Of a stretch of DNA of 64,000 nucleotides, positions 6,135-62,412 are shown piece by piece. Numbering within the stretch: the stretch's first letter is position 1; every line of letters begins with the position of its first letter. The translations under genes and the position numbers were made by a program. Source of the DNA: Macrostomum hystrix (taxonomy: Eukaryota; Animalia; Platyhelminthes). The notes beneath the pieces were generated by a model, which ran no database searches, had not been told where the DNA came from, and worked only from the letters and a program-made list of their open reading frames with translations. The stretch covers positions 9,362,001-9,426,000 of the forward strand of contig CATNEN010000003.1 in the NCBI GenBank assembly GCA_950097015.1, given 5' to 3'.

Positions 6135-6254
6135 GCTTAACAATGTGTCTGCAATATGGATTTTATAATGCACAATGATTCCAAAGCGATATGCTTAGAA
6201 AATCACATAATTAATATATTAACAGAGTAAACATTTATAAATAAGTCATTTACA

Positions 6255-6940
6255 AACCCAATCAAACAGGATCGATAAACTATAAACTGTCAAACAGTAT
6301 CTATAAACCCAATCAATCAGGATCTATAAACCCAATCAATCAGGATCCATAAACCCAATCTATCAGGATCTATAAACCCAATCTATCAGAATATATAAAC
6401 ACAATCTATCAGGATTTATAAACCCAATCTATCAGGATCTATAAACCCAATCTATCAGGATCTATAAACCCAATCAATCAGGATCTATAAACCCAATCAA
6501 TCAGGATCCATAAACCCAATCTATCAGGATCTATAAACCCAATCAATCAGGATTTATAAACCCAATCAATCAGGATCTATAAACCCAATCTATCAGGATC
6601 TATAAACCCAATCAATCAGGATATATAAACCCAATCTATCAGGATCTATAAACCCAATCAATCAGGATTTATAAACCCAATCAATCAGGATCTATAAACC
6701 CAATCAATCAGGATCCATAAACCCAATCAATCAGGATCCATAAACCCAATCTATCAGGATCTATAAACCCAATCTATCAGGATCTATAAACCCAATCTAT
6801 CAGGATTTTTAAACCCAATCAATCAGGATCTATAAACCCAATCAATCAGGATCTATAAACCCAATCAATCAGGATTTTTAAACCCAATCTATCAGGATAT
6901 ATAAACCCAATCTATCAGGATCTATAAACTCAATCAATCA
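6255..6940. repeat. Minisatellite, 23-bp unit TATAAACCCAATC(A/T)ATCAGGATC
   Basis: Direct inspection; about 30 units between the upstream gene's 3' end and misato. Confidence 0.95.
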
Positions 6941-7527
6941 CTACATCGATGTTTTTCTATGAATAAAAAATTAACCGAAGTAAAGACAGAACTTAAACAA
7001 TTTATAAATGCGAAGATTTATTGATAATATTATTAAAAACCAAATATCAAATAAATGTAAAAATAAACGAAATGTATTACTATTAGCACCATTAGATATT
7101 AGAAATGTATTAAAAGTTATTAATTAATTCAAGAATAGTAAGCATAAAACAATTCAGAAGCATAACCTGATAGCGGTTATTATGCACAAAGTTTGAAAAT
7201 GAAAAATAGGTCAAATAATATTTGTAAAAACTCTAAAAAACTGTCTTCAGTTGGACACTGGAACAGACAAAGATGGAAATGCTAGTACTACTGGATATGT
7301 ACTATAAATCAGAGCTATAAAACAGACTATAACAAATCTGAAATGCTGGCATTGAAAGCACAAAGTTAACAAATAGATTTTTCCACAATGCATCTCGAGG
7401 TTTAAAAGTTGTTATAATCAACTAAACAAAATAACATTTTCAAACGAGCAGTTCTCTTGATAAATCGTTGGCACAAAGGCTAATTTTCAGAACTAAACAG
7501 CCTGTTTAGTGGAAGAAATGAAATCTA

Positions 7528-43804: not shown

Positions 43805-45595
43805 AATCATATCCAACCCCAATAGAATGCTGCTGGAAATCTCATCCAACCCCAACAGAAAGCTGCTGGAAATCTCATCCAACTTTTATAGAATGCTGCT
43901 GGAAATCTGATCCAACCCCAGCAGAATGCTGCTGGAAATCTCATCCAACCCCAACAGAATGCTGCTGGAAATCTCATCCAACCCCAACAGAATGCTGCTG
44001 GAAATCTCATCCAACTTTTATAGAATGCTGCTAGAAATCTCATCCAACCCCAACAGAAAGCTGCTGGAAATCTCATCCAACTTTTATAGAATGCTGCTGG
44101 AAATCTGATCCAACCCCAGCAGAATGCTGCTGGAAATCTCATCCAACCCCAACAGAATGCTGCTGGAAATCTCATCCAACCCCAACAGAAAGCTGCTGGA
44201 AATCTCATCCAACTTTTATAGAATGCTGCTGGAAATCTGATCCAACCCCAGCAGAATGCTGCTGGAAATCTCATCCAACCCCAACAGAATGCTGCTGGAA
44301 ATCTCATCCAACCCCAACAGAATGCTGCTGGAAATCTCATCCAACTTTTATAGAATGCTGCTAGAAATCTCATCCAACCCCAACAGAAAGCTGCTGGAAA
44401 TCTCATCCAACTTTTATAGAATGCTGCTGGAAATCTGATCCAACCCCAGCAGAATGCTGCTGGAAATCTCATCCAACCCCAACAGAATGCTGCTGGAAAT
44501 CTCATCCAACCCCAACAGAATGCTGCTGGAAATCTCATCCAACTTTTATAGAATGCTGCTGGAAATCTGATCCAACCCCAGCAGAATGCTGCTGGAAATC
44601 TCATCCAACCCCAACAGAATGCTGCTGGAAATCTCATCCAACCCCAACAGAAAGCTGCTGGAAATCTCATCCAACCCCAATGGAATGCTGCTGGAAATCT
44701 CATCCAACTTTTACAAAAAGCTGCTGGAAATCTCACCCAACCCCAATAGAATGCTGCTGGAAATCTCATCCAACCCCAACAGAAAGCTGCTGGAAATCTC
44801 ATCCAACTTTTATAGAATGCTGCTAGAAATCTCATCCAACCCCAACAGAAAGCTGCTGGAAATCTCATCCAACCCCAACAGAATGCTGCTGGAAATCTCA
44901 TCCAACCCCAATGGAATGCTGCTGGAAATCTCATCCAACTTTTACAAAAAGCTGCTGGAAATCTCACCCAACCCCAATAGAATGCTGCTGGAAATCTCAT
45001 CCAACCCCAACAGAAAGCTGCTGGAAATCTCATCCAACTTTTATAGAATGCTGCTAGAAATCTCATCCAACCCCAACAGAATGCTGCTGGAAATCTCATC
45101 CAACCCCAACAGAATGCTGCTGGAAATCTCACCCAACCCCAACGAAATGCTGCTGGAAATCTCACCCAACCCCAACAGAATGCTGCTGGAAATCTCATCC
45201 AACCCCAACAGAATGCTGCTGGAAATCTCATCCAACCCCAACGAAATGCTGCTGGAAATCTCACCCAACCCCAATAGAATGCTGCTGGAAATATCATCCA
45301 ACCCCAACAGAATGCTGCTGGAAATCTCATCCAACCCCAACGAAATGCTGCTGGAAATCTCACCCAACCCCAACAGAATGCTGCTGGAAATCTCATCCAA
45401 CCCCAACAGAATGCTGCTGGAAATCTCATCCAACCCCAACAGAATGCTGCTGGAAATCTCATCCAACCCCAACAGAATGCTGCTGGAAATCTCATCCAAC
45501 CCCAACGAAATGCTGCTGGAAATCTCATCCAACCCCAATGGAATGCTGCTGGAAATCTCATCCAACCCCAATGAAATGCTGCTGGAAATCTCATT
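43805..45595. repeat. Minisatellite, 33-bp unit CTCATCCAACCCCAACAGAATGCTGCTGGAAAT
   Basis: Direct inspection; about 54 units upstream of the CPT1 start. Confidence 0.96.
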
Positions 45596-46298
45596 CCGTC
45601 TATCTTGGTCTTATAGTTTTTTTTCACAATAAATGTATATTATTTATTGTCCAAAGATTTGCTTTTCATTTCAAGTCTGCATAATTTAGAATGTTTTGCA
45701 GCTTAAAAAATCTGATAGGACATTGCCTCCAGTCTGTTCCAAAGGGCAAAGTGTAAAATTCTTTGGTACTTGTACCTCCTCACCCAACTGGCCCACTGTC
45801 ATATATCTGTAATTCTTATCTATCAAGTTGTTTCATTGAAAACATCAAGACAAAAATCTTACTAAGCGACTATTTCAACTTTGAAGATAAAGAAATCGTA
45901 AGCTTAACTGCTTGAAGCGTATCGCCGAGCTGTAAATCTACCATATTCGGGGGTGTACTCATAGTTATTATAAATAGAATGTTTTACACATGGTGACCTT
46001 TTACCGAACTAAACTAATTTAATCTACTTTACTCTTTGCAGTTTGCCCTCTGTGAAAAAATTGAGAACAGGGCTTTGGGATAAGGGGGCACGGCCCGCAT
46101 TACGTAGGTTTATAAGTCCTTTTTGTGCTGTGCTTCATTGCTTCAAAGCAATTAGAAATTCATTTTGTGTAGACTAGCCGACCCCCTATTTGATCTGATC
46201 TTTTCAGAACAACGCGAAAACTAAAAGCAAACAGACGAATAGCTTCTAGAAGAAGAAACACAATAAACACTCGTTAAAAAGGCAAAGCACAAGTAAAC

Positions 46299-49200
46299 AT
46301 GGCAGAAGCTCACCAGGCTGTTGTATTCGCATTCAACATCACCGATCAGGGTGTGCAATTCGAATTCGATCACGCCGCATTGATGCAGGTTTGGCAGTCG
46401 GGAGTTCGAGCCTACAAAAAGTGGTACGCCAGATTTAAGAATCGACTGAGGAATGGCATCTACCCTGCTAGACCGGGTAGCCTACTAGCCATGATGCTAG
46501 TTATGATCTTTGCCACCATGTTTGGCAACGATCTGTCATTCGGCTATGTGAAACGACTCAATCCGTTTGTTGTGAGGTTGGTGAAAATTATTTTCTGATT
46601 AGAATTTTTAATAGAAATAGTTAGGCGATCGATTAAAATTTCGCTTTGAGACACTTACTTTTCATTACCCTGTAGTTTTTAAGACTCTTTTAGTTTGTAA
46701 AAAAATCTAAAATAAAATGGAGTTGTAGCCTTGTGGTTAGAGCGTCGGACTCACGGCTTGAGGGTCGGGTGTTCGATTCCCGCCTCCACTAAAACAATTT
46801 GTGGCCTTTAGCTGGGGTAATTAAGGGTGGGTTTGGCGACCAACCAGTCCATGGACTGAACAACCGTACGCAGCCTTGTGTGTGCTGTCGGCTTCACAAC
46901 TGGCCCAATTGGGGCAGGTGTAATTAAAAAATTGTTCGTTGGCTAATGCTAAACATAAAATAAAGTTAATTATTTTTCACTGCCTACCTAATAAATGTTT
47001 ACCGGGGGTCGGTGGCAGAGCGGTTAACGCGTTTGCCTCTCGCACCAAGGTCCCTAAGTTCAATTCCGAAGTGAGGCCACATTTATTTGGGGCGCAGCCG
47101 CGGAGAGAAGGCTTGGGGGCTTGTCGTGCAATTTACGCCCTTGAGGGCCAACCTCCAAGGCACAGCGACGATGAGAAAGTCAGGGCAGATGTACACCTGT
47201 GTGAGTGTATGCCTCCGTAAGGTATCTGTGTGCGTGTGTGCTCAGGAGTCAGCTAAATGGGCAGAATTGACACTACATGATGTGCAATTGCCCGCAGCCC
47301 TCCTGAAATTATTCTCATTATTAATAACTGTTTATCTATTTTGCCTGTTTACTTGTTCCAATTTAGTTACCTAGGCGTTGTGCCGCCACACGATACCTAT
47401 GTGTCCTGCATGCTAATAGCATGCCTACTCTGGCTACTGGTGGTGTTGTTTTACAAGCTACTAATTAGCCGCCTATTAGCCTACCAAGGCTGGATGTACG
47501 AAGGTCGTGGCAAGGTGTCCAGGCCAACTAAAATTTGGGCTGTCCTGGCTAAGGCACTGCTAGGCAACAGGCGAGCTGGTTTGTACTCTTATCAGAGCTC
47601 CCTGCCGAGACTGCCCGTTCCTTCTGTTGGCGACACTCTGCGGCGCTACCTGGTTTCCATGGAGCCACTGCTGAATGCGGATGGCATGGCCGAGATGCAG
47701 AAATTGGCTGCCGATTTTCAGGTGATGCATAATTTTGTTAGATTTATCTAGAGAACATTGGATTCGATTCGAATAGGGGGATGGGCTTCGAATATGCGGG
47801 ATGGGATTCGAATAGGTGGGATGGGATTCGAATAGGTGGGATGGGATTCGAATAGGTGGGATGGGATTCGAATAGGTGGGATGGGATTTAAATGGGTAGA
47901 TTGGTATTTGAATAGGTCGGATGGGATGTGAGTAGGTTAGATGGGATTTAAATTGGTAGGTTGGTATATGAATCGGTAAATTGGGATTTGAATAGGTAGG
48001 ATTTTTTGTCCCTATGCGTGTGTGTACTCGCATAGTTTGAGAAATGGGCAGAATTGCCTCCTGGCTGGTTGAAATTTATTTATAAAGTAATTTATCAGAG
48101 CTTATGACCTCTTAAAACCATTTTTAATATCACTCTATCAAAGCAGGCAAACAATATTCTCTAAGACACGAGTCCATTCTGAAATTGACACAAAAATTTT
48201 AGAAGTCTGGCGTAGCCAGGAAGCTACAATTCTATCTGCGCCTAAAATCATGGTGGGCGCCAAACTACGTAAGCGATTGGTGGGAAGAATTCGTCTACCT
48301 ATACAGCCGCGACCCAATCATGGTTAACTCCAACTACTACGGCGTTGATGCCATCTTTGTCCGGCCAACTAGAGTGCAGGCTGCTAGGGCTGGCAACGTC
48401 ACCTGGGCTATGCTGCAGTTCTGGCGTCGCGTCTGTCGCGAGGACATGCCGCCTATTTGTTTAAATGATACCGTGCCATTGTGTAGCTGGCAATACGAAA
48501 GACAGTTTGCCACAACCAGAGTGCCGGGTGAGTTCCTTCTGTGATCCCCAGGAATGGATTCTATGATCCTTCAGGACTGGATTCTATGATCCTTCAGGAC
48601 TGGATTCTATGATCCTTCAGGACTGGATTCTATGATCCTTCAGGACTGGATTCTATGATCCTTCAGGACTGGATTCTATGATCCTTCAGGACTGGATTCT
48701 ATGATCCTTCAGGACTGGATTCTATGATCCTTCAGGACTGGATTCTATGATCCTTCAGGACTGGATTCTATGATCCTTCAGGACTGGATTCTATAATCCT
48801 TCAGGACTGGATTCTATGATCCTTCAGGACTGGATTCTATGATCCTTCAGGACTGGATTCTATCCTTCAGGGCTGGATTCTATCCTTTAGGGCTGGATTC
48901 TATCCTTTAGGGCTGGATTTTATCCTTTAGGGCTGGATTCTATCCTTCAGGACTGGATTCTATCCTTCAGGGCTGGATTCTATCCTTCAGGGCTGGATTC
49001 TATCCTTCAGGGCTGGATTCTATCCTTTAGGGCTGGATTTTATCCTTTAGGGCTGGATTCTATCCTTCAGGGCTGGATTCTATCCTTTAGGGCTGGATTC
49101 TATCCTTCAGGGCTGGATTCTATCCTTCAGGGCTGGATTCTATCCTTCAGGACTGGATTCTATCCTTCAGGACTGGATTCTATCCTTCAGGGCTGGATTC

Positions 49201-52200
49201 TATCCTTTAGGGCTGGATTCTATCCTTTAGGGCTGGATTTTGTCCTTTAGGGCTGGATTCTATCCTTCAGGGCTGGATTCTATCCTTCAGGGCTGGATTC
49301 TATCCTTCAGGGCTGGATTCTATCCTTCAGGGCTGGATTCTATCCTTTAGGGCTGGATTCTATCCTTCAGGGCTGGATTCTATCCTTCAGGGCTGGATTC
49401 TATCCTTTAGGGCTGGATTTTATCCTTTAGGGCTGGATTCTATCCTTCAGGGCTGGATTCTATCCTTCAGGGCTGGATTCTATCCTTCAGGGCTGGATTC
49501 TATCCTTCAGGGCTGGATTCTATCCTTCAGGGCTGGATTCTATCCTTCAGGGCTGGATTCTATCCTTCAGGGCTGGATTCTATCCTTCAGGGCTGGATTC
49601 TATCCTTCAGGGCTGGATTCTATCCTTCAGGGCTGGATTCTATCCTTCAGGGCTGGATTCTATCCTTTAGGGCTGGATTTTATCATTTAGGGCTGGATTC
49701 TATCCTTTAGGGCTGGATTCTATCCTTCAGGTCTGGATTTTATCATTTAGGGCTGGATTCTATCCTTCAGGGCTGGATTTTATCATTTAGGGCTGGATTC
49801 TATCCTTTAGGGCTGGATTCTATCCTTTAGGGCTGGATTTTATCATTTAGGGCTGGATTCTATCCTTTAGGGCTGGATTTTATCATTTAGGGCTGGATTC
49901 TATCCTTTAGGGCTGGATTTTATCATTTAGGGCTGGATTCTATCCTTTAGGGCTGGTTTTATCCTTTAGGGCTGGATTTTATCCTTTAGGCCTGGATTCT
50001 ATCCTTCAGGGCTGGATTCTATCCTTCAGGGCTGGATTCTATCCTTTAGGGCTGGATTTTATCATTTAGGGCTGGATTCTATCCTTTAGGGCTGGATTCT
50101 ATCCTTCAGGTCTGGATTTTATCATTTAGGGCTGGATTCTATCCTTCAGGGCTGGATTTTATCATTTAGGGCTGGATTCTATCCTTTAGGGCTGGATTCT
50201 ATCCTTTAGGGCTGGATTTTATCATTTAGGGCTGGATTCTATCCTTTAGGGCTGGATTTTATCATTTAGGGCTGGATTCTATCCTTTAGGGCTGGTTTTA
50301 TCCTTTAGGGCTGGATTTTATCCTTTAGGCCTGGATTCTATCCTTCAGGGCTGGATTCTATCCTTCAGGGCTGGATTCTATCCTTCAGGTCTGGATTCTA
50401 TCCTTCAGGGCTGGATTCTATCCTTTAGGGCTGGATTCTATCCTTCAGGTCTGGATTTTATCATTTAGGGCTGGATTCTATCCTTCAGGGCTGGATTTTA
50501 TCATTTAGGGCTGGATTCTATCCTTTAGGGCTGGATTCTATCCTTTAGGGCTGGATTCTATCCTTTAGGGCTGGATTTTATCATTTAGGGCTGGATTCTA
50601 TCATTTAGGGCTGGATTCTATCCTTCAGGGCTGGATTCTATCCTTCAGGTCTGGATTCATGTGATCTTTAAGGACTGTATTCATTGATTCTTCAGGACTA
50701 GTACGAAAAATGTGTAAGTTCTATTCTGCAGCCTTCGAAACTCAAATCTTCATTTCAACTTGCAATGTACAGGCGAAGAGCGCGACTACCTGATGCACCT
50801 GAACGACACGCGCCACATTGCCGTCTTCCATGCTGGTCGCTACTACAAGGTTTACTTTCACTATGGCAACCGCTGGCTAGAACCGTGCGAACTGGAAGCC
50901 CAGCTGCAGAAGATCATCGACGACAAGTCGGCTCCAGTTGCTGGCGAAGCTGAACTGGCAGCTCTCACAGCCGGCGAACGCAAAGTGTGGGCCCGCGCTC
51001 GCAAGGACTTCTTCAGACGTGGCGTGAACAAGACCAGCCTAGATGCTGTTGAACGGGCCGCATTCTTCCTGGTTCTGGACGATGAAGAGGCCGACTATGA
51101 TCCCGAGGATGACTCAAAGCTGGATCGTTATGCTAAGAGCCTTCTGCATGGCAACGGTTGCAATCGCTGGTTCGACAAGTCCTTCTCGCTAATTGTGTTC
51201 GCTAATGGACGGGTGAGTTTCGATTTTTAGATCGTTTTTTCACTAGAGTTCCTAGTTAATGCTTTATCCCTTAAGTAAATTTGTGTCAAGAATCCATTTT
51301 TTCAATCCCCTAGTTTTGTTAAAAAAATTTTACCGATAATACGTAGTTTAGATCCTCTAAAATCCCTAGTTTCGATCTTAAGGACTTGTGATTTTGAAAT
51401 CAAAATTGAAACCAAACTTGAAATCTCAAGAATCCCTAGTTAAAGATTTCTTAGAATCCCTAGCTCTAAGAGTCCCCAAGAATCCTAAGGCTTATATCCC
51501 TAAAAATTTGCATTTGATATAAATCCCAGTTTAAATCCTTTAAAGTTCCTGAATCCGTAGTTGAAATCGCGAGAACTCCTAGCTAAAATCCCAAGAATAT
51601 CTGGTTAAGATCCTCGAAATAAATAGTTAAAGATCCTCAATAATCCTTAGTTAAGATTATCATGAATGCCTAGTTAAGATCCTCTAAATCCCTAGCTAAG
51701 ATCTGTAGAAATTCCCAGTTTAGATCCTCAAGAATCCCTAGTTGAAATCCCCAAGAATCCCTAGTTGAAATCCTCAAGAATCCCTAGTTGAAATCCTCAA
51801 GAATCCCTAGTTGAAATCCTCAAGAATCCCTAGTTGAAATCCTCAAGAATCCCTAGTTGAAATCCTCAAGAATCCCTAGTTGAAATCCTCAAGAATCCCT
51901 AGTTGAAATCCTCAAGAATCCCTAGTTGAAATCCTCAAAAATCCCTAGTTAAAATCATCAAGAATCCCTAGTTGAAATCCTCAAGAATCCCTAGTTGAAA
52001 TCTGAAATCCTCAAGAATCCCTAGTTGAAATCATCAAGAATCCCTAGTTGAAATCATCAAGAATCCCTAGTTGAAATCATCAAGAATCCCTAGTTGAAAT
52101 CCTCAAGAATCCCTAGTTGAAATCTGAAATCCTCAAGAATCCCTAGTTAAAATCCTCAAGAATCCCTTGTTGAAATCATCAAGAATCCCTAGTTGAAATC

Positions 52201-55200
52201 CTCAAGAATCCCTAGTTGAAATCCTCAAGAATCCCTAGTTGAAATCTGAAATCCTCAAGAATCCCTAGTTGAAATCCCCAAGAATCCCTAGTTGAAATCA
52301 TCAAGAATCCCTAGTTGAAATCATCAAGAATCCCTAGTTGAAATCCCCAAGAATCCCTAGTTGAAATCCCCAAGAATCCCTAGTTGAAATCATCAAGAAT
52401 CCCTAGTTAAAATCCTCAAGAATCCCTAGTTGAAATCATCAAGAATCCCTAGTTGAAATCATCAAGAATCCCTAGTTGAAATCCCCAAGAATCCCTAGTT
52501 GAAATCCCCAAGAATCCCTAGTTGAAATCCTCAAGAATCCCTAGTTAAAATCCTCAAGAATCCCTAGTTGAAATCATCAAGAATCCCTAGTTGAAATCAT
52601 CAAGAATCCCTAGTTGAAATCATCAAGAATCCCTAGTTGAAATCATCAAGAATCCCTAGTTGAAATCCTCAAGAATCCCTAGTTGAAATCTGAAATCCTC
52701 AAGAATCCCTAGTTAAAATCCTCAAGAATCCCTTGTTGAAATCATCAAGAATCCCTAGTTGAAATCCTCAAGAATCCCTAGTTGAAATCCTCAAGAATCC
52801 CTAGTTGAAATCTGAAATCCTCAAGAATCCCTAGTTGAAATCCCCAAGAATCCCTAGTTGAAATCATCAAGAATCCCTAGTTGAAATCATCAAGAATCCC
52901 TAGTTGAAATCCCCAAGAATCCCTAGTTGAAATCCCCAAGAATCCCTAGTTGAAATCATCAAGAATCCCTAGTTAAAATCCTCAAGAATCCCTAGTTGAA
53001 ATCATCAAGAATCCCTAGTTGAAATCATCAAGAATCCCTAGTTGAAATCCCCAAGAATCCCTAGTTGAAATCCCCAAGAATCCCTAGTTGAAATCCTCAA
53101 GAATCCCTAGTTAAAATCCTCAAGAATCCCTAGTTGAAATCTGAAATCCTCAAGAATCCCTAGTTGAAATCCCCAAGAATCCCTAGTTGAAATCTGAAAT
53201 CATCAAGAATCCCTAGTTGAAATCTGAAATCATCAAGAATCCCTAGTTGAAATCCCCAAGAATCCCTAGTTGAAATCCTCAAGAATCCCTAGTTAAAATC
53301 CTCAAGAATCCCTAGTTGAAATCTGAAATCCTCAAGAATCCCTAGTTAAAATCCTCAAGAATCCCTAGTTGAAATCATCAAGAATCCCTAGTTAAAATCC
53401 TCAAGAATCCCTAGTTGAAATCCTCAAGAATCCCTAGTTGAAATCCTCAAAAATCCCTAGTTAAAATCATCAAGAATCCCTAGTTGAAATCCTCAAGAAT
53501 CCCTAGTTGAAATCTGAAATCCTCAAGAATCCCTAGTTGAAATCATCAAGAATCCCTAGTTGAAATCATCAAGAATCCCTAGTTGAAATCATCAAGAATC
53601 CCTAGTTGAAATCCCCAAGAATCCCTAGTTGAAATCATCAAGAATCCCTAGTTAAAATCCTCAAGAATCCCTAGTTAAAATCATCAAGAATCCCTAGTTA
53701 AAATCCTCAAGAATCCCTAGTTGAAATCTGAAATCCTCAAGAATCCCTAGTTAAAATCCTCAAGAATCCCTAGTTGAAATCTGAAATCCTCAAGAATCCC
53801 TAGTTAAAATCATCAAGAATCCCTAGTTAAGATCCCCATGAATGGTGAATCCCTAGTTAAAGTATCAATAGTCTTGTTTTGAAACTGCTCAACAATAGTT
53901 TAAATCTCACTGTCTATTTTGCATTGTACTTTAACATTTTTATTAAAGTACATTGTCTATGTGCTGTATTTATCTGACAACTTTCAGATTGGTTTCAATG
54001 CCGAGCACAGCTGGTGAGAATACCAATTATTTTTTAATTTTTAATACATTAATATTTTTAATATTTATTTTTAGTTATAGAATGTTGACTGTACATTTTT
54101 CTCTACATTATTTATTTCTAATTACTGCTATAATCAAGTTAGTGCTTAGAAAAACTGGCATTCATACGTACTTCAAATTTACTTGTAAAAATCGATCTAA
54201 TTAAGAGGCGACGCAGTCCTGATGTCTCACCCAGTCGAAGAGATTGTGGAACATGACTGCGTCATCTATGGGTAATTCTTCCATGATTAGATGTCCATAG
54301 AATTAGACCCTTCTGCTTGTCGTTAAAGTACACACATTGTGTCGAAATTACGACTTAAAGGACGGGGGTTCGATTCCTGACTCCACTAGGTGCCTAGACT
54401 ACTATTAGTAAGCTTTTGTGTGTTACTTTTGTACTTGTTTTTTTATTTCTCGTTATCATAGTTACTAACTAGACTAGACAATCGCTTGTAATGTATACCG
54501 TCGCTTGTTGTTTTAGATGTCACCTGTATGTGTATTTATATTACTTATTAATTTTATTACTTAATTTTTCTTATATGTGCTTCGTTTGCATAGATTTATT
54601 TATTCAATTTTTTTTTCATTAAACTCTTTGCTCAATTTTTAAAGGGCCGACGCTCCGATTGTATCCCAACTATGGGAAGAGGCAGTCATCACTTACGACA
54701 TTGTGCCAGATACTGGGTATAACCATTATATGTTATTCAATGCACTAAATTTTCCTTTGTTAGTTTGTATGAACTCGACAGCAAAATGCATTATTATTAC
54801 TATAGATTAGTTTTTTCTATTGGTTCATTTGGATGCTAAAATAATAATTTGAATACTAGTTATTTTCCACTTGTTAATCTACTTTAACTGTTTTGATAAA
54901 CCCGTGTTAACTCTACTGTTAAGTAATTGAAGACCGTCTGCGAGATTAGAAAAACTTGATCTACCGTCTAGCTGCTTTCTGATTGGTTGCAAAGTTTTTT
55001 TCTCTCCAATGCTTGTGCGGAATTTCCGCGGTATTACCTTTCTCATCTCGCACCGAAATCATTGACTCACATACAAGATGAACCATTATTGACTTGCAGC
55101 AAAAATAAAATTTTAATTTAATTAAAATTTACTGCTAGCCTAAACATTACTGATTACCGATTTGATTGCACTTTCACTAAATTCAATACAAATCTAAGTA

Positions 55201-58200
55201 AACCTGTAGTTTATTGTACAATTGTCATGCTAGTTTTTATTTCAATCCGCAGATACGCTTCATCGGGTCACTGCAAGGGCACCCCGAAAGGCACCGTGCC
55301 TAATCCCATCCGGCTGCAGTGGGATCTGCCCGAGGCTTGCCGCTCAGTGATTGGCAGCCAGCTGCTGGTGGCAACAGACCTGCTGAACGATGTGGACTTG
55401 CACCTGGTGGTTCACCGCCAGTTTGGCAAGGGCGCAATGAAGCGCTGCTCAATGAGCCCGGACGCTTTCATCCAGCTGGCCCTACAGTTGGCCTACTTCA
55501 GGGACAGCGGCGGAGAGTTCTGCCTCACTTACGAGGCCTCCATGACCCGGCTGTTCAAGGAGGGCCGCACGGAGACTGTGCGATCATGCACCAACGAATC
55601 CTGCGCCTTTGTGCGCGCCATGGAGAGCGTCTCGGCTAGCGTGAGTCTCGCTGTGCTGTGATTGGCTGTTGCGATTTTTTACTGACTTGTCCGCACTCAA
55701 CTACTAGCAGTAGAAAGTATAGTAAAACGACGTGATTTTCCGATTTTTGAGGAAATGTAAAATATGCATTTTTCTTACTGAAATCAGAGCGTTTAGCGCG
55801 CGTGCCTCTCGTGCCAAGGTCCTTGGCTCGATTCAGCGGTTAGGCCACATTTATTTTTGTCGCAATCCGCTAAGAGAAGGCTTTAGAGCGTGACACGGAA
55901 TTTAGTGCCAAGCCCCTGATTTCGATTTAGATTCATATATTTACACCCCCGTGTGAGTGTGTGCCTTCATTCGTACAGTATCTGTGTGCGTTTAGCTTCT
56001 AGCTTGCTTTTGGGTCCACTATCACCAACCAATGCGCCTGTGCCCAGTGTCAATAACCCTGAAAAATAAGTGCATATCTGTGTGAGCTAAAACTGTATGT
56101 TGTTTATGTAGATCTATTTCAAGAATATTTTTAAACTTTTAGTTTTTTTCTAGCATTTCTACTTACAGTAGTTAAGTGAAAGTTTAAGTTTAATTAGTTT
56201 AAGATTTAAAGGGTGTGGTTGTAACAATTTTTTTTTATTTTGAAAGTTTAAAAAATGGGCTTAAATGTTTAACTTACACTGACTGCCTGGAGATTTCGCT
56301 ACAACTGTATTTCTGTCTGTTTGTTTGCCCTACAATTTTAATTGTTGATGCTTTTAAATGCTACATTTTTTAGTTTATTATATATAGCATTTTGCAGCCT
56401 AGTTGATCCCTTCACAGAACGAAGCTTAACTTCATTTTTTAAACGAAGCTCATGTTAGATTGCATGGGCTAAAAGGGTGACCACACAGAGAAGTATATAG
56501 TCTTTGTCTGTTTTTTGGTTCCTATTGTCTGAGAAAGGCCTAGGACGCGGTTCTCAGGCCGAGGCGAAGCCTTAGGAACATCGCGTCCAAGGTCTTTCTG
56601 CCATAGACACCAAAAACAACAGACAAAGAATGTACTTTAAATCTTATTATATCGATAGAACATTTTAGCCCGATCGTTTTCAGGCTTGTGAAGTCGTTTA
56701 CTGACCTCGTTTCGAGTTTTGGGCTTAATTTTTTATGTCTTTTGGCCATAGACGGCCATAGAATAAGTCTCCATTAATTGCTTTAATAATTGCTGAACGA
56801 GCCACTCATTTTGTAGATTAAGTACCCGCTAAAAAATAGGGATGTTTCTTTGGGTGATTCCAGTTGGAATCTGCGGTGTTTCCAGAAAAAGAAACAGCCG
56901 AACGCTGGAAACATACCAATCGGATGATTCCATGCTTAGAATCTACCCAACTGGGCGTTTTCTCGGTGCTTCTTGGTGGCGAAATGGAATCACCTAAAGA
57001 ATCCTCCAATTCGGAAGATTCCATGCTCAGAAACCGCCGAGGAATCGCCCGTAAATAATTCTCTGGTTGTCCCATGGGCCACTGGTTCGGGTGATTCTTT
57101 GGTGGTTTCCGCACAATTTACGGTTACATCGGCTGCTTCCTGGGTGGTTTCTTTAACTCTTGCTAGATAGGGGGGATTTTGGTAGATTCCACTCCTATTT
57201 TGCACAAAAAACACGCCGAAGAAGCGGCCGAATTTTTTACACGGTAAATAAGAAACGCTGTTTAATTCACATTCTGTGGTTAGAATGTCCGAGGCTGCGT
57301 TTAATGGTCTCGAGGACCATTGATTGCAGCCGAGGATATTCTAACCATAGACTATGATGAATTAAACGGCGTTTATCATATATGAAATTCGATTGCTTAT
57401 TTTCGGGGGCATCCCATCTGATTGATAGCCATATAGGTTTAGACCATTTGATTCCGACCATAGACAAAAAGATAAATTTCTCACGAAGATACAGTCACGA
57501 AGCAGCCAGTCAGTCAGTGGTTGCAAAACGTACAAGCCGAATTCAAAGTTCACTTCAATGTTCCATATAATACTCCTTATTTCGTGGAGATTATGTGATA
57601 TAATATCCTAGTTTTTGTCAAATTATCTCACCAAAAATTACCATAGACAACACATTCCCGGCTCAGAATAGTACAATTTTTAACGATTAAATAAGCAATT
57701 GTATTTTATATGATTAAACGCGCTCTCGCAATCGATTTGATCCTTCGGACACGCATTTAAGCGCCTCTCCACTGTTTGGTTGTTATTGTTTGTCCTAGAA
57801 CACAGACTAGACAGTTTTCATCAGACGTTAGAGAGCGAAGTAGCTAACACTATGTTCGGCGAAGAAATTAAAGATTAAATCTATCGAGGAAGAAATCTAT
57901 GGGGTGGGACTAAATGCGTGTCCGAAGGATCAAATCGTTTGCTCTATGGTCATACTTTTGGCCATAGACAACTTGAAAATCGGCCTGAAACTCTTGGATT
58001 TTGCCACTGTGGATTAAATCGAATGCTCGAAGGATCAAATGGTCCGCAAAAAGCTATATAATTAATAATGATCAACTAGACTGAAAAAGCAAAATTATCA
58101 ATATATTGAATCATACCCGCAGTTGCATGCATTCAATCAAGCTGTGGCAGTGTTTCTTTTGTGTATTGGACACACAATTTGCTGGTCGTAATTATTTTTA

Positions 58201-60054
58201 ATATGACAAAGCAGACTGTAGATATGAAAGATAAAGCAAATAAGACATATGAGATGACAACTGAGAATGCCTAGAAAGATCATTGCTAAACTATGTTGTT
58301 TATATCTAAAGGGCTTCTATCGGATTAGCAGCCCCATTAATCTTTAGACCGCCAGAAAGTCTGTCTACGAGAAAATACCAATCGATGTTCTACAACAATC
58401 TAGGCATAAAATGGTATTGAGCAGTGTCTAGCGACCGCGTGTTAGTTTCGCTATCCGCTAATAGTAATATAATGTGATATACTGATGTGCAGCATCTGAA
58501 TGCATCACTGAGCGCATTAATTATTTACTAGAAATATTGTACGGCAGTCATCAGTATGTTAGCATATCTAGGCAGGCTGTTTTATTCTCTTTCATTCGGG
58601 GATATTAAATTCATTTTTAGGTGGACTTCCGTATTGTTAGTTGTCATTTTTCCTATCTAACGCTTCATACTTTTCCTAATCGTAGTCTACTGCTAGCTAG
58701 CAAATGTTTATGAAATTGTGTCCGGTCAATGTAAATTGCAGGCAAAGTAGGATCTGTTACTGACTGCGCAGCTACTTGTAGGCTACTTAAGCTAACCCTC
58801 GGGAACGCACGTGACATACCTTCTACGTATGCCTCTATTAAAAGTCACTTGACCCCGGTCTAAGTGTGTCACGTGGGAGTCACTTGACCCCCTGTCTAAG
58901 CGTGTCACGTGAGAGTCACTTGACCCCCTGTCTAACGTGTCATGCGGGAGTCACTTGACCCCTCTGTCTAACGTGTCGTGTGAGGGTCACTTGACCCCGT
59001 GCCTAAGTGTGTCATGTGGGAGTCACTGGACCCCTGTCTAAGCGTGTCACGTGAGAGTCATTTGACCCCGTGTCTAACTTGTCATGTGGGAGTCATTTGA
59101 CCCCCTGTGTAACGTGTCATCAAGAAGGATTACAAATTCCCTCGTATCCTCATTTCCCAATCCTGCAGAAGCAGGAGGTGGTCCGGCTGTTGCGCGCCGC
59201 CTCGGAGAAGCACCAGACGATGTACCGGGACGCAATGACCGGCAAAGGTGTAGACAGGCACTTGTTCACCCTGTACGTGGTGTCCAAGTACTGCAAGATC
59301 CAGTCGCCATTCCTGGAGAAGGCGCTGCACTGCCAGTGGAAGCTGTCAACTTCGCAGACTCCGCACGGCCAGACGAGCAAACTGGACCTTGGACGGAATC
59401 CGGACTTTCTCAGCGCCGGCGGCGGCTTTGGTCCGGTGTCGCACGACGGCTACGGTGTGTCTTATATCATCGCCGGAGAGGACACCATCTTCTTTCACAT
59501 CAGCTGCCGCGTCAGCTCTGAGAAGACGGTAGGTTTGCTGCTTAGCTAGTTAGCTGTTTCTTGATCACCAAATCGTAGTTTTACTGTCCGAGATTATCAC
59601 CGAAGCCAAGATCCTTGACCTACATTCTAGATCCTCACCTGGATCTACATCTCAGATCCTCACCTGGATCTACATCTCAGATCCTCACCTGGATTTGCAT
59701 CCCAGATCCTCACCTGGATTTGCATCCCAGATCCTCACCTGGATTTGCATCCCAGATCCTCACCTGGATTTGCATCCCAGATTCTCACCTGGATTTGCAT
59801 CCCAGATTCTCACCTGGATTTGCATCCCAGATCCTCACCTGGATCTACATCCCAGATCCTCACCTGGACATACAGACAGAGATAAGATTACATATCCCTA
59901 CAAAGATCCCAGATCCCCACCCTAGACCTAGATCCCGGCTCCAATTATGTCAAAAGTGCTAAATTGTCTACCTGTATGATTTCAGAATTCCCGTCGATTC
60001 GGCGAGCGAATCTGTCAAGCGCTGCTAGACGTCAAGAATCTGTTTGACGATTGA
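46299..60054 (+). CDS. CPT1: Carnitine O-palmitoyltransferase 1 (copy A), 770 aa using exon 6B
   Basis: Exons 46299-46576, 47367-47721, 48203-48527, 50773-51212, 53988-54013, [6A 54206-54271 or 6B 54645-54716], 55253-55640, 59169-59528, 59986-60054; all GT-AG and in frame (2313 nt). Motifs [89 protein letters not shown] and GGGFGPV. Confidence 0.96.
46719..46925 (+). mobile_element. SINE family B copy (internally deleted)
   Basis: Head GGAGTTGTAGCCTTGTGGTTAGAGCGTCGGACTCACG, B-box and 3' end; CPT1 intron 1. Confidence 0.85.
47003..47310 (+). mobile_element. SINE family A copy
   Basis: Head with A/B boxes and body; CPT1 intron 1. Confidence 0.88.
47760..48000. repeat. Minisatellite, 20-bp unit ATGGGATTCGAATAGGTGGG
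   Basis: Direct inspection; CPT1 intron 2. Confidence 0.88.
48545..50700. repeat. Minisatellite: 23-bp GGATTCTATGATCCTTCAGGACT switching to 20-bp GGATTCTATCCTTCAGGGCT
   Basis: Direct inspection; fills almost all of CPT1 intron 3. Confidence 0.97.
51720..53860. repeat. Minisatellite, 23-bp unit GAATCCCTAGTTGAAATCCTCAA, with degenerate lead-in from ~51290
   Basis: Direct inspection; CPT1 intron 4. Confidence 0.97.
54206..54271 (+). other. CPT1 alternative exon 6A; splicing creates in-frame TGA at codon 475
   Basis: aag|A GGC GAC GCA GTC CTG ATG TCT CAC CCA GTC GAA GAG ATT GTG GAA CAT GAC TGC GTC ATC TAT GG|gtaatt. 66 nt, phase 2-2; [22 protein letters not shown] aligns with the CPT1 ADAPIVxHLWE..D....G segment. 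Confidence 0.75.
54350..54390 (+). mobile_element. SINE family B head fragment between exons 6A and 6B
   Basis: CGACTTAAAGGACGGGGGTTCGATTCCTGACTCCACT. Confidence 0.6.
54645..54716 (+). other. CPT1 alternative exon 6B (canonical, Trp-forming)
   Basis: aag|G GCC GAC GCT CCG ATT GTA...ACT GG|gtataa. 72 nt, phase 2-2; gives [15 protein letters not shown]. Confidence 0.92.
55785..56065 (+). mobile_element. Old, diverged SINE family A copy
   Basis: GCCTCTCGTGCCAAGGTCC, GGCCACATTTATTT, GAGAAGGCTT and GTACAGTATCTGTGTGCG in SINE A order. Confidence 0.65.
56580..58045. mobile_element. Cluster of unclassified non-autonomous DNA-element remnants in CPT1 intron 7
   Basis: Six dispersed CCATAGAC motifs; inverted repeat TTTGATCCTTCGGACACGCATTTA / TAAATGCGTGTCCGAAGGATCAAA (~57736-57935); possible short TIR pair at 56823 and 57246. 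Confidence 0.45.
58842..59120. repeat. Minisatellite, ~35-36-bp unit GAGTCACTTGACCCCCTGTCTAAGCGTGTCACGTG
   Basis: Eight units visible at the end of CPT1 intron 7. Confidence 0.9.
59610..59870. repeat. Minisatellite, 25-bp unit GATCCTCACCTGGATTTGCATCCCA
   Basis: Direct inspection; CPT1 intron 8. Confidence 0.92.
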
Positions 60055-60491
60055 AGCTTGTTGAAGCCTGTTCAGTGCTTAAATTGACGCTTTTGAAATC
60101 GATTGCGAATTAGTGAAGTACAATGTCCATTATATCTATATATATATTTCACTGTTACTTAATATTTTGTAATTTACATTAGTAAAAGTACTTAATTAAC
60201 AAACACAGAATTTCATTAACTTTCCACTGTAGCGAATTTAGTTCTTTTGCGTTAGTTCTCAGCGTATATAAATTGTATTGCAGTGTACACATTTATATAT
60301 TTCGGTGTAGTTTTACCGCTTTTAAACTCGAGTTAGCATGTGCAGCATGAAAGCACAGTCCCTAAAGTACATTATTCCTAAATAAACTGCTCTCTTTTCA
60401 TTTTTGGTGCATTTCTTTTTCCTTTGTCTTCGAGATTCCACCTAACACCGCCTGTGCTTAGTGTTACGGCAGTTCTGGTGAGGTGATGTGC

Positions 60492-60922
60492 AAACCAGCT
60501 AATTAGCGTATAGTAAGATTTCTTTTGGATTTTAAACCAGCCAATCAGCGAAAGGTTAGATTTTTTAAACCAGCCAATCAGCGAAAAGTTAGATTTTTTG
60601 GATTGTTAACCAGCCAATCAGCGAAAGGTTAGATTTTTTAAACCAGCCGATCAGCGAAAAGTTAGATTTTTTGGATTGTTAACCAGCCAATCAGCGAAAG
60701 GTTAGATTTTTTAAACCAGCCAATCAGCAAAAAGTTAGACTTTTTGGATTGTTAACCAGCCAATCAGCGAAAGGTTAGATTTTTTAAACCAGCCAATCAG
60801 CGAAAAGTTAGACTTTTTGGATTGTAAACCAGCCAATCAGCAAAAAAGATACTTCTTTCGTGTGAAAAAACTAGCAATCAGCGTTAAGTAAGATTTCCTT
60901 TGGATTGTAAACCAGCCCATTG
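60492..60922. repeat. Dimeric tandem repeat (alternating ~33/38-bp units) with AACCAGCCAATCAGCG
   Basis: About 12 subunits between the two CPT1 genes. Confidence 0.9.
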
Positions 60923-61870
60923 ACGGGCAAGTTAAAAAAGTGAAAATTAGTTTTTCTATCTGTAGCAGACTGTTTATCCATACAGTAGGCCTACGTCAAT
61001 GATATTTCTCGCGTGCACTCTGGGGCCCATAAAAAATAGACCGCACATTGATTGGCTATAAAGTAAATAATCAAGTGATTAGGCTTAGCTCTGATTTTCT
61101 CAATAGAAAAAAGTATTAAAATTGGCTGATTTAGGCAAATAAAGGAAGTAGTTTGTACTATGCAATGCTTGCCTGTATGTTACGTTATGTAAGATCACTT
61201 GCTTATCTATTTTTACGATATTTTATTAATTCTAATCAATATTTCTATAGTCAGCAACAAAAGACAATTAGAATGAGATAAACAATTTTTTTTGGCTACA
61301 GTTCAGTATATTAAGTCCTTTTATCATTTTTGATCGGCAATCAATGATACAGAATCCTACTTGGGAAAGCTGATAGTATTGATGATGATATGTGTGCCAG
61401 ATCGAAAATATGAATTTATATGATAACTTTGTCATCAGACGAAAAAACGCAAGTGTTGATTGCGCTGTTTGCAATTTGAGTGAACTTCTTCAATAGTAGA
61501 TATTTTCCTATCATTTTTTCGCTCATATACTAACTCGAACAGCTTGTATTTTTATTGGCTCAATTAATGATTAATTATTTATTACTTTTTGTTTAATCAA
61601 GCAAGTTTTTATTCAGTTAGTTTAGCAACAAATAGACACGTCAATTTAGTATTGTGCTGATTGTTTCTTGGATAACTTGTTTTGTTTTGCTTTACTTATA
61701 TTATTTTTTTATTACCTTTTGTAGTACAAATTATATTATAGTTTAAATAGTTGTTTAAGCGAGTGGACATTGAGAAATAAATAAATCGCTTATGCCATAA
61801 CATCTAGAAAAGTCGCGCAATAGTTGACACTATGAGATTAGGTCATTGGACTATTAGGATATATTTAGAG

Positions 61871-62412
61871 CAGGGGTTGGCAAACTTGTAAGCTAGCGGG
61901 ATAAAGAGCGAACCTAAAAGACGATAGTGGGCCGCATTGAGTGTAGAAGTGTGAGATAGGGGAGAGATAAGACAGATGAGACGCGGGAGAGATAAGAAAC
62001 ATAATAGATGAGACACATGAGCTATGAGACACGGGAGAGATAAGACAGGAGAGATGAGACACAGGAGAGATGAGACACGGGAGAGATAAGACAGGAGAGA
62101 TGAGACACAGGAGAGATGAGACACATAAGAGATGAGACACAGGAGAGATGAGACACAGGAGAGATGAGACACGGGAGAGATGAGACACGGGAGAGATAAG
62201 ACAGGAGAGATGAGACACAGGAGAGATGAGACACAGGAGAGACGAGACACGGGAGAGATGAGACAGGGAAGAGACGAGGCCGCGGAGAGATACGACAGGG
62301 GGTCGGATGAAACAGGGTACTATCGTGTTTAGGATAGTATAGGGGCAACGGGCCGGATTTAGGAGCTTCGAGGGCCGCATCTGGACCGCAGGCCGGAGTT
62401 GGCCGAGCCCTG
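61871..62412. mobile_element. hAT MITE with internal GAGAC/GAGAT array, second copy
   Basis: TIRs CAGGGGTTGGCAAACT and AGTTGGCCGAGCCCTG; degenerate TSD ATTTAGAG/ATCAAGAG; arms homologous to 8109-8735. Confidence 0.88.

What the first reader, a model, noticed from the sequence alone, without database searches (positions are those of the whole stretch)
53988..54271. Splice-assembled in-frame UGA two residues after the CPT1 catalytic His: candidate recoding or NMD switch
Seen: exon 5 ends CAC AGC TG, so the first base of the next exon picks the codon. Exon 6B gives TGG (Trp475) and 6A gives TGA. The only nearby alternative AG (2 nt downstream) shifts frame into another stop. Yet 6A stays open, keeps the DA..H..E..D..G pattern, has the expected 21-codon length, a good gtaatt donor and an aag acceptor like those of 6B, misato exon 2 and methyltransferase exon 4. 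Inference, unresolved: (i) UGA readthrough or selenocysteine giving an HS(W/C/R/U)GDA active-site isoform; (ii) A-to-I editing of the first exon base restoring Trp; (iii) a duplicated exon exapted as a poison exon controlling fatty-acid oxidation by NMD; (iv) recent pseudo-exonisation or a base error. I found no canonical SECIS by eye in the 3' UTR (60055-60390). I know of no described CPT1 with a UGA at this position.
Basis: partly seen in the sequence, partly recalled or inferred. Interest (0 to 1): 0.9.

Follow-up and report, generated by a model that had tools for sequence, protein, structure and literature searches.

The report
Stop-bearing spare exon in flatworm CPT1
One of four fat-burning CPT1 genes in a Macrostomum flatworm has a second, odd copy of its active-site exon. 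Splicing it in creates a stop codon, so it most likely makes no enzyme, though I could not check RNA data.

Summary
Exon 5 (53988-54013) ends CAC AGC TG. Candidate exon 6A (54206-54271) starts with A, giving TGA. Exon 6B (54645-54716) starts with G, giving Trp.

6A is a real relative of CPT1's post-His exon. It has the canonical 66 nt and keeps D2, A3, H8, E11 and D17. It outscores all 3216 intron 17-mers on a CPT1 profile, and it is a 53% GC island in 21-31% GC introns.

It is also atypical:
- It scores below 98.5% of 262 real CPT1 segments.
- It occurs in only one of four paralogs of this genome (size and contig count fit Macrostomum hystrix).
- No M. lignano CPT1 protein uses it.
- It folds into a hairpin that 6B lacks.

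I found no SECIS. The position is Trp in nearly all relatives and never Cys, and the UGA-G context is not leaky. An ADAR gene exists, but the 5' neighbour G disfavours editing.

Best reading (about 0.55): a degenerate duplicated exon whose inclusion is unproductive, either a poison exon or a pseudo-exon. 6B makes the enzyme.

The scan also flagged this stretch in two other notes.

The parts
46299..60054 (+). CPT1 gene, window copy. ATG at 46299, stop TGA at 60052-60054. All exons are open when 6B is used.
   Evidence: ORFs and exon translations. Exons are 75-92% identical to M. lignano CPT1 P0228.
50773..51212 (+). Exon 4, used as the protein search query (50775-51212).
51551..53843 (+). 23-nt minisatellite, about 96 copies, filling intron 4.
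   Evidence: Tandem Repeats Finder.
53988..54013 (+). Exon 5, a 26-nt micro-exon encoding IGFNAEHS plus TG. It holds the catalytic His codon CAC at 54006-54008. The donor is gtgaga at 54014.
   Evidence: The same exon and phase occur in three paralogs.
54195..54202 (+). 5' arm of an 8-bp outer stem (AUCUAAUU) just upstream of the 6A acceptor. It pairs with 54287-54294.
   Evidence: MFE fold of 54180-54300. It is AT-rich and could be chance.
54206..54206 (+). The critical base A. With TG from exon 5 it forms TGA. It is predicted to pair with U54267.
54206..54271 (+). Candidate exon 6A: 66 nt, acceptor attaag|A, donor GG|gtaatt. It encodes (stop)[21 protein letters not shown] plus GG.
54210..54218 (+). 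5' arm of a perfect 9-bp stem, GACGCAGTC (codons D2 A3 V4).
   Evidence: the repeat finder I18 and folds.
54255..54263 (+). 3' arm of the perfect 9-bp stem, GACTGCGTC (codons D17 C18 V19).
54287..54294 (+). 3' arm of the outer stem, downstream of the 6A donor.
54335..54389 (+). tRNA-like (T-arm) repeat fragment in the intron between 6A and 6B. At least 40 copies occur elsewhere in the genome. It is not part of 6A.
   Evidence: Own-genome DNA search. Weak tmRNA/T-arm hit.
54645..54716 (+). Exon 6B, 72 nt, the productive copy. It encodes W(TG|G)[23 protein letters not shown] plus GG.
   Evidence: It is 91% identical to M. lignano P0228.
55253..55640 (+). Exon 7. It starts with A, so joining exon 5 directly to exon 7 also gives TGA.

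Best explanation
Exon 6A is a genuine but degenerate tandem duplicate of the CPT1 exon that follows the catalytic His. The same exon is alternatively duplicated in insects, crustaceans, molluscs and other protostomes.

In this flatworm only one of four CPT1 paralogs keeps a second copy. Because that copy starts with A, any mRNA joining exon 5 to 6A carries UGA two codons after the catalytic His. Such an mRNA cannot encode an active enzyme. At most it would give a truncated protein ending ..NAEHS. With three exon junctions downstream, it would be a candidate for nonsense-mediated decay (NMD).

Active CPT1 from this gene is made through exon 6B. So 6A is an unproductive exon. It is either a poison exon, whose RNA hairpin and weak AAG acceptor set how often it is used, or a pseudo-exon on its way out.

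Shown: the sequence, the homology, the divergence, the paralog distribution and the hairpin. Inferred: that the stop is read as a stop, and that inclusion, if it happens, is unproductive.
For: - **Stop at the junction.** The junction reads HS-TGA-GDA. The only nearby alternative AG gives a frameshift and a stop.
- **Homology.** 6A scores +11.5 bits on a CPT1 profile, against a maximum of -14.7 for 3216 intron windows. It keeps D2, A3, H8, E11 and D17 and the canonical 66 nt.
- **Divergence.** 6A scores below 98.5% of 262 real CPT1 segments (median 43 bits). At positions 4, 9 and 15 it has residues (V, P, E) seen in none of 194 unique CPT1 segments, and L5 is seen in about 1%.
- **Paralogs.** The other three paralogs go from exon 5 to a 6B-type exon with no 6A-like exon between them.
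- **M. lignano.** All four paralogs exist 1:1 in M. lignano. Every M. lignano CPT1 protein found uses the 6B type.
- **Gene intact through 6B.** Every other exon is open and 75-92% identical to the M. lignano ortholog.
- **Against recoding.** No SECIS was found. The position is Trp in nearly all relatives and never Cys. The gene's own terminator is TGA.
- **RNA-level role.**
  - 6A alone folds at -25.8 kcal/mol, z = -2.7, matched by 3 of 200 shuffles. Exon 6B has z = +0.45 and the C24 paralog's copy +1.0.
  - The unusual codons V4, C18 and V19 are exactly those that make a perfect 9-bp stem with the conserved D2, A3 and D17 codons.
Against: - No RNA or raw-read evidence was obtained, so inclusion, NMD and even the base itself are untested.
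- 6A is a sharp GC island: 53% GC and GC3 0.62, against 21% and 31% in the flanking introns. It keeps usable splice sites. This argues against long neutral decay. It fits a functional exon, which could equally be a coding exon rescued by editing or one only recently knocked out.
- The genome has an ADAR-type gene, and the A lies in a duplex.
- The M. lignano protein sets may simply lack a minor isoform, and I could not inspect relatives' genomes.
Confidence: 0.55

Rival explanations
1. Recently inactivated coding exon. 6A was a working alternative exon (HSWGDA...) until a single G-to-A change at its first base. That change may be fixed only in the inbred SR1 line, or may be an uncorrected assembly error. 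Elsewhere in the species the codon would be TGG.
For: The stop is the only lesion. The frame is open, the invariant residues D2, A3, H8 and E11 are kept, the composition is exon-like (GC 0.53, GC3 0.62), and both splice sites are intact. The assembly comes from a highly inbred selfing line, where null alleles can drift to fixation (PMC10468722).
Against: 6A is much more divergent than functional CPT1 exons, below 98.5% of them, with Pro at position 9 and Val in place of the usual Trp at position 10. The hairpin is left unexplained. Substitution errors are rare after Illumina polishing. No 6A-type isoform appears among M. lignano proteins.
Confidence: 0.2
2. ADAR editing of A54206 on the pre-mRNA turns UGA into UGI, read as Trp. 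The hairpin would then license an HSWGDA active-site isoform.
For: An ADAR-architecture gene (two dsRBDs plus A_deamin) lies on contig C9. A54206 is predicted to pair with U54267 at the base of a roughly 25-bp imperfect hairpin that is significantly stable (z about -2.7 to -2.9). The outer stem would extend the duplex on the 5' side in the pre-mRNA.
Against: The 5' neighbour is G both before and after splicing, the least favoured neighbour for ADARs (general knowledge). The A sits at a helix end next to a 3-nt bulge. The resulting peptide would still be a very atypical CPT1 segment. No RNA data were obtained.
Confidence: 0.1
3. Programmed UGA readthrough inserts Trp, Arg or Cys by near-cognate decoding, stimulated by the downstream hairpin. 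This would give a low level of full-length 6A isoform.
For: The hairpin begins 4 nt after the UGA. Near-cognate decoding of UGA commonly inserts Trp, which is the canonical residue here (general knowledge).
Against: The +4 base is G, not the leaky C or CUAG context. The 9-bp stem would already be inside the ribosome's mRNA channel when UGA is in the A site. UGA is used as the normal terminator of this same gene.
Confidence: 0.04
4. Selenocysteine insertion at the UGA, giving an HS-U-GDA isoform.
For: The UGA is in frame and a hairpin follows it. Unchecked notes from this scan report selenoprotein genes with SECIS elements elsewhere in this genome.
Against: No SECIS was found at E up to 10 in 59400-62000, 53900-55500 or 55560-59400. 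A pattern scan of the 3' UTR found none. No homolog has Cys at this position, and nearly all have Trp. Caveat: I had no positive control for SECIS detection in this genome.
Confidence: 0.01

Closest known systems
Drosophila CPT1 (whd) mutually exclusive exons 6A/6B (Price et al. 2010, J Biol Chem 285:7857, cited in PMC3793950; splicing regulation in PMC10879661)
   Same: It is the same exon of the same enzyme, the one right after the catalytic His. It is tandemly duplicated with the same phases. In the fly, the choice between copies tunes fatty-acid oxidation.
   Different: Both fly exons are coding and give active enzymes with different kinetics. Here one copy produces UGA at the junction and is strongly divergent. 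It is also present in only one of four paralogs.
Alternative exon-6 isoforms annotated in crabs, bivalves, a chiton, a nemertean and a bryozoan; both copies included in single models of Lingula, Magallana, Mytilus and Ylistrum (RefSeq/UniProt proteins)
   Same: The exon boundaries are the same (W|ADA...G|Y), the units are 21-22 aa, and the duplicates are tandem. A second exon 6 is therefore common in protostomes and not special to insects or to this flatworm.
   Different: All of those copies are near the family consensus and begin with the Trp-completing G. The flatworm 6A is an outlier and begins with A.
Stop-bearing member of a mutually exclusive exon pair, such as SCN8A exons 18N/18A, and poison exons coupled to NMD in general (from my own knowledge, not checked in papers here)
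   Same: One copy of a duplicated exon pair introduces an in-frame stop, so choosing it switches off production of functional protein.
   Different: The known cases have transcript and conservation evidence. Here inclusion, NMD and conservation are untested, and the stop is assembled by the splice junction and does not lie inside the exon.
ADAR stop-to-Trp recoding, such as the hepatitis delta virus amber/W site (from my own knowledge)
   Same: A stop codon inside an RNA duplex could become Trp by A-to-I editing.
   Different: The known site is UAG with a favourable 5' U. Here the A follows G. No RNA evidence is available.

Membership tests
CPT1 exon-6 tandem alternative (mutually exclusive) exon pair | Two tandem exons homologous to each other and to the post-His exon, with identical splice phases and similar length | tested here: met
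   6A is 66 nt and 6B is 72 nt. Both start in phase 2 and end with GG|. 6A scores +11.5 bits on the CPT1 profile, against a maximum of -14.7 for introns.
CPT1 exon-6 tandem alternative (mutually exclusive) exon pair | Each copy encodes a functional alternative segment | tested here: not met
   The 5/6A junction gives TGA. 6A scores below 98.5% of real segments.
CPT1 exon-6 tandem alternative (mutually exclusive) exon pair | mRNAs contain one copy or the other | not testable with these tools
No proteins of this species are in the protein collection.
Poison exon / regulated unproductive splicing | Inclusion introduces a premature stop upstream of further exon junctions | tested here: met
   The TGA lies at the 5/6A junction, with junctions 6A/7, 7/8 and 8/9 downstream.
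Poison exon / regulated unproductive splicing | The exon is included in transcripts and these are stabilised when NMD is blocked | not testable with these tools
   No read data were obtained.
Poison exon / regulated unproductive splicing | Conservation of the exon and its stop in related species | tested here: inconclusive
   It is absent from three paralogs and from M. lignano proteins. Relatives' genomic DNA could not be fetched.
Eukaryotic selenoprotein gene | SECIS element in the 3' UTR | tested here: not met
   No SECIS family hit at E up to 10. No pattern candidate in 60040-60800. No positive control was available in this genome.
Eukaryotic selenoprotein gene | Cys or Sec at the aligned position in homologs | tested here: not met
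   Trp in nearly all of the several hundred CPT1 relatives inspected, rarely Tyr, Phe or another residue, never Cys.
ADAR recoding site | ADAR enzyme encoded in the genome | tested here: met
   On contig C9, two dsrm domains are followed by A_deamin.
ADAR recoding site | Target A embedded in a stable duplex | tested here: met
   A54206 pairs with U54267 at the base of the hairpin. z = -2.7 to -2.9.
ADAR recoding site | Favourable neighbour (5' U or A, not G) | tested here: not met
   The 5' neighbour is G in the pre-mRNA (aaG|A) and in the mRNA (UG|A). The preference itself is from general knowledge.
ADAR recoding site | A in DNA but G in cDNA | not testable with these tools
Programmed stop-codon readthrough | Leaky stop context (UGA-C or UGA-CUAG) or a suitably spaced 3' stimulator | tested here: not met
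   The context is UGA-GGC. The hairpin starts only 4 nt downstream.

The most novel reading that the evidence does not exclude
The UGA is deliberately kept and conditionally recoded to Trp. This would happen by ADAR editing of the exon's first base inside the exon-spanning hairpin, or by structure-stimulated readthrough. The flatworm could then gate a second CPT1 active-site isoform at the RNA level. It would be the first editing- or readthrough-dependent alternative exon in a core fatty-acid oxidation enzyme.
Probability: 0.13. Interest if true: 0.8.

Novelty: new member of a known kind. Interest (0 to 1): 0.35.

Why it matters
CPT1 is the rate-limiting gate of mitochondrial fatty-acid oxidation. 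In flies, the choice between two versions of this same exon tunes enzyme activity with feeding state.

If the stop-bearing copy proves to be a regulated poison exon, this flatworm could turn one CPT1 paralog off by splicing. That would be a different use of the same duplicated exon.

If it is only a decaying copy, it shows how an old alternative-exon pair is lost after gene duplication: four paralogs may replace two isoforms.

Both outcomes caution gene annotators that this exon should not be merged into a protein model.

A by-product of the check has some interest of its own. Duplication of this active-site exon is widespread across protostomes, not only in insects.

Tried and rejected
- **Read evidence.**
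  - The look-up of sequencing runs listed 12 runs.
Exon 7 was used only up to 55520, and Rfam scans were cut at 55500 and restarted at 55560.
- **Exon-4 protein search for same-species or sister-species ORFs**. It returned nothing closer than 62% identity.
- **Representative search**. It gave CPT1s from many phyla, none closer than 58%.
- **Alignment A1**, with every exon as a separate row, aligned badly and was dropped. A2 was used instead.
- **Alternative splice solutions that avoid the stop, all rejected**.
  - The AG 2 nt downstream gives a frameshift.
  - Exon 5 has no other GT donor.
  - No second exon-5-like copy exists.
  - Joining exon 4 directly to 6A is out of frame (read by hand).
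- **6A as part of a transposon: rejected.** Only the tRNA-like fragment at 54335-54389 is repeated in the genome.
- **Genome-wide SECIS search as a positive control** returned nothing and is uninformative.
- **Docking/selector-type intron pairings.** Many AT-rich 12-20 nt inverted matches exist, and none stands out from chance.
- **A C. elegans paper mentioning CPT and mutually exclusive exons** proved irrelevant.
- **Price et al. 2010** (PMC2832936) is not held.
- **Joined spliced model.** Only a local frame check of the junction codons was made from the window file.
Full report
**What is in the sequence**

The window holds a complete CPT1 gene on the + strand, from ATG 46299 to TGA 60052-60054.

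- Exon 5 is a 26-nt micro-exon, 53988-54013. It reads ATT GGT TTC AAT GCC GAG CAC AGC TG, followed by gtgaga. It carries the catalytic His and leaves two bases of the next codon.
- Exon 6B (54645-54716, acceptor tttaaag|G, donor GG|gtataa) completes TGG. It reads [25 protein letters not shown] and joins exon 7 (55253-55640) in frame.
- Exon 6A (54206-54271, acceptor attaag|A, donor GG|gtaatt) lies 192 nt after exon 5. Joined to exon 5 it reads ..[30 protein letters not shown], then continues in frame into exon 7.
- The only alternative AG, 2 nt downstream, shifts the frame into a stop.
- Exon 5 has no other GT donor, and there is no second exon-5-like copy.
- Skipping both exon 6 copies also gives TGA, because exon 7 starts with A.

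**Which organism**

- Earlier notes of this scan call the genome a Macrostomum flatworm.
- The assembly has 220,453,370 bases in 42 contigs. This matches the published M. hystrix assembly: about 220 Mb, 42 contigs, inbred line SR1, PacBio long reads polished with Illumina reads (PMC10468722).
- The window's CPT1 exons are 75-92% identical to M. lignano CPT1 A0A1I8H8H2, which is P0228.

**Is 6A a real relative of exon 6?**

Yes.

- I built a position profile from 262 distinct CPT1 segments following HSW. On it, 6A scores +11.5 bits.
- The 3216 stop-free 17-codon windows from this gene's introns have mean -52 and maximum -14.7.
- 6A aligns without gaps to CPT1s of many phyla, at up to 10 of 22 identities.
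- It keeps the near-invariant D2 (99%), A3 (95%), H8 (85%) and E11 (97%), and also D17 and the closing Gly.
- It has the canonical 66-nt length. The Macrostomum 6B-type exons are longer and have Gln instead of His at position 8 in all four paralogs of both species.
- 6A therefore does not look like a recent copy of today's 6B. It probably predates the four paralogs. This is an inference from few characters.
- 6A is not part of a repeat. Only a tRNA-like fragment at 54335-54389 recurs in the genome.

**6A is not a typical coding copy**

- Its profile score is below 98.5% of real CPT1 segments (median 43 bits, 5th percentile 21.8). Several of the few lower scorers look like mis-annotated read-throughs.
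- At positions 4, 9 and 15 it has residues (V, P, E) seen in none of 194 unique CPT1 segments; L5 occurs in about 1%. The usual Trp at position 10 is Val.
- The genome has four CPT1 paralogs: the window copy, a tandem copy about 15 kb downstream, one on C24 and one on C39.
- In the other three, exon 5 is followed only by a 6B-type exon. In C24 the intervening intron is only about 120 nt. In C39 exons 6 and 7 are fused.
- The same four paralogs exist 1:1 in M. lignano. All M. lignano CPT1 proteins in the collection, including every member of the four 90% clusters, use the 6B type.

**Features that argue against plain neutral decay**

- 6A is a sharp composition island: GC 0.53 and GC3 0.62, like the coding exons. 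The flanking introns have GC 0.21 and 0.31.
- Both splice sites are usable. The AAG acceptor is shared with 6B.
- The exon folds into one long hairpin.
  - Exon alone: -25.8 kcal/mol, z = -2.7, matched by 3 of 200 dinucleotide shuffles.
  - With flanks: z = -2.9, matched by 4 of 200.
  - Exon 6B has z = +0.45 and the C24 paralog's copy has z = +1.0.
- The core of the hairpin is a perfect 9-bp stem, GACGCAGTC (54210-54218) with GACTGCGTC (54255-54263).
- The first arm is codons D2-A3-V4 and the second is D17-C18-V19.
- So the unusual residues V4, C18 and V19 are exactly those that make the conserved D2, A3 and D17 codons self-complementary.
- This suggests selection on RNA structure at the expense of the protein sequence. 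That is my inference. It would also explain why the 'invariant' codons survive.
- That the frame 'stays open' is weak evidence. Twenty-one random codons avoid a stop about 36% of the time.

**Recoding options**

- *Selenocysteine.*
  - Rfam covariance models found no SECIS at E up to 10 in 59400-62000, 53900-55500 or 55560-59400.
  - A pattern scan of 60040-60800 found no candidate.
  - I had no positive control, because genome-wide SECIS searches returned nothing.
  - More telling, the aligned residue is Trp in nearly all relatives and never Cys.
- *Readthrough.* The context is UGA-G. The stem starts only 4 nt after the stop. UGA terminates this very gene.
- *Editing.*
  - The genome has an ADAR-architecture gene, with two dsRBDs followed by A_deamin, on C9.
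  - A54206 is predicted to pair with U54267 at the base of the hairpin, so editing cannot be excluded.
  - But the 5' neighbour is G, which ADARs disfavour (general knowledge), and the A lies at a helix end beside a bulge.

**Context from other animals**

In Drosophila this same exon exists as 6A/6B. The choice between them changes enzyme activity and responds to starvation (PMC10879661; Price et al. 2010 as cited in PMC3793950). Protein records show the same exon in two or three alternative versions in other groups:

- crabs (Scylla, Eriocheir, Portunus);
- oysters, mussels, scallops and Dreissena;
- a chiton, a nemertean and a bryozoan.

Both copies are included in single models of Lingula, Magallana, Mytilus and Ylistrum. 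All of those copies are near consensus and start with the Trp-completing G. A second exon 6 is therefore ordinary in protostomes. What is unusual here is only the stop and the divergence.

**Verdict**

- *Most likely (about 0.55).* 6A is a degenerate duplicate whose inclusion is unproductive. It may act as a poison exon whose hairpin and weak acceptor limit or regulate its use, or it may be a pseudo-exon being lost now that four paralogs exist. I cannot separate these two versions without RNA data.
- *Next (about 0.2).* A recently inactivated coding exon, a line-specific null allele or, less likely, a base error.
- *Recoding.* Editing or readthrough together are about 0.13 to 0.14. Selenocysteine is about 0.01.

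**Limits**

After that I worked beside those places and sent none of their letters to any search tool.
Exons were searched one by one by reference, and the joined step was left out.
- The scan flagged this same stretch in two other first-stage notes, one on the hairpin and one on the exon pair.

Noticed in passing
G000:C3:9424001-9442000 (L021+L024); G000:C24 (L022+L025); G000:C39 (L023+L026): This genome has four CPT1 paralogs. One is a tandem copy about 15 kb downstream of the window gene. All four have 1:1 counterparts in M. lignano, where the tandem pair is again adjacent on one contig (PAA83980/PAA83981). In C39, exons 6 and 7 are fused.
   Followed up: partly
window 51551-53843; L021 about 5130-6330 and 6900-7350; C24 intron between exons 6 and 7 (L022+L025): Each paralog carries its own long minisatellite (20-25 nt units, up to about 96 copies) in the introns around exons 4-7. 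The unit sequence differs in each copy.
   Followed up: no
window 54335-54389: A tRNA-like (T-arm GGTTCGATTCC) fragment lies in the intron between 6A and 6B. It has at least 40 near-identical copies across the genome, so it is probably a tRNA-derived SINE. It gave a weak Rfam tmRNA hit.
   Followed up: partly
M. lignano proteins P0305, P0306, P0307 (PAA75325, PAA69330, PAA83981): Three M. lignano gene models of the window gene's ortholog switch frame after ..[10 protein letters not shown] and end early at about 620-629 aa. UniProt models read through normally. The cause is either an unproductive splice variant at the 6B/7 junction or indel errors in that assembly.
   Followed up: no
window 54013/55253 junction: Skipping exon 6 altogether (5 joined to 7) also creates TGA, because exon 7 starts with A. 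In the C24 paralog exon 7 starts with C, so this feature is not conserved.
   Followed up: partly
proteins P0298 (Lingula), P0406 (Magallana gigas X1), P0420 (Mytilus), P0436 (Ylistrum): Public gene models include both tandem copies of the post-His exon in one protein (..FVQGADAPIMGHLWE..). These are probably annotation artefacts of a mutually exclusive pair. The pair is widespread in Lophotrochozoa and crustaceans.
   Followed up: partly
G000:C9:212636-216066 (L028, L029): A gene with two dsRNA-binding motifs followed by an adenosine-deaminase (editase) domain, i.e. ADAR architecture. Further A_deamin loci lie on C2 and C25.
   Followed up: partly
window 43807-45632: A long tandem array upstream of the CPT1 gene gives open frames of up to 606 codons on both strands (repeating MRFPAAFxWGW / MLLEISSNPNR). 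It looks like repeat-generated ORFs and not a gene.
   Followed up: no
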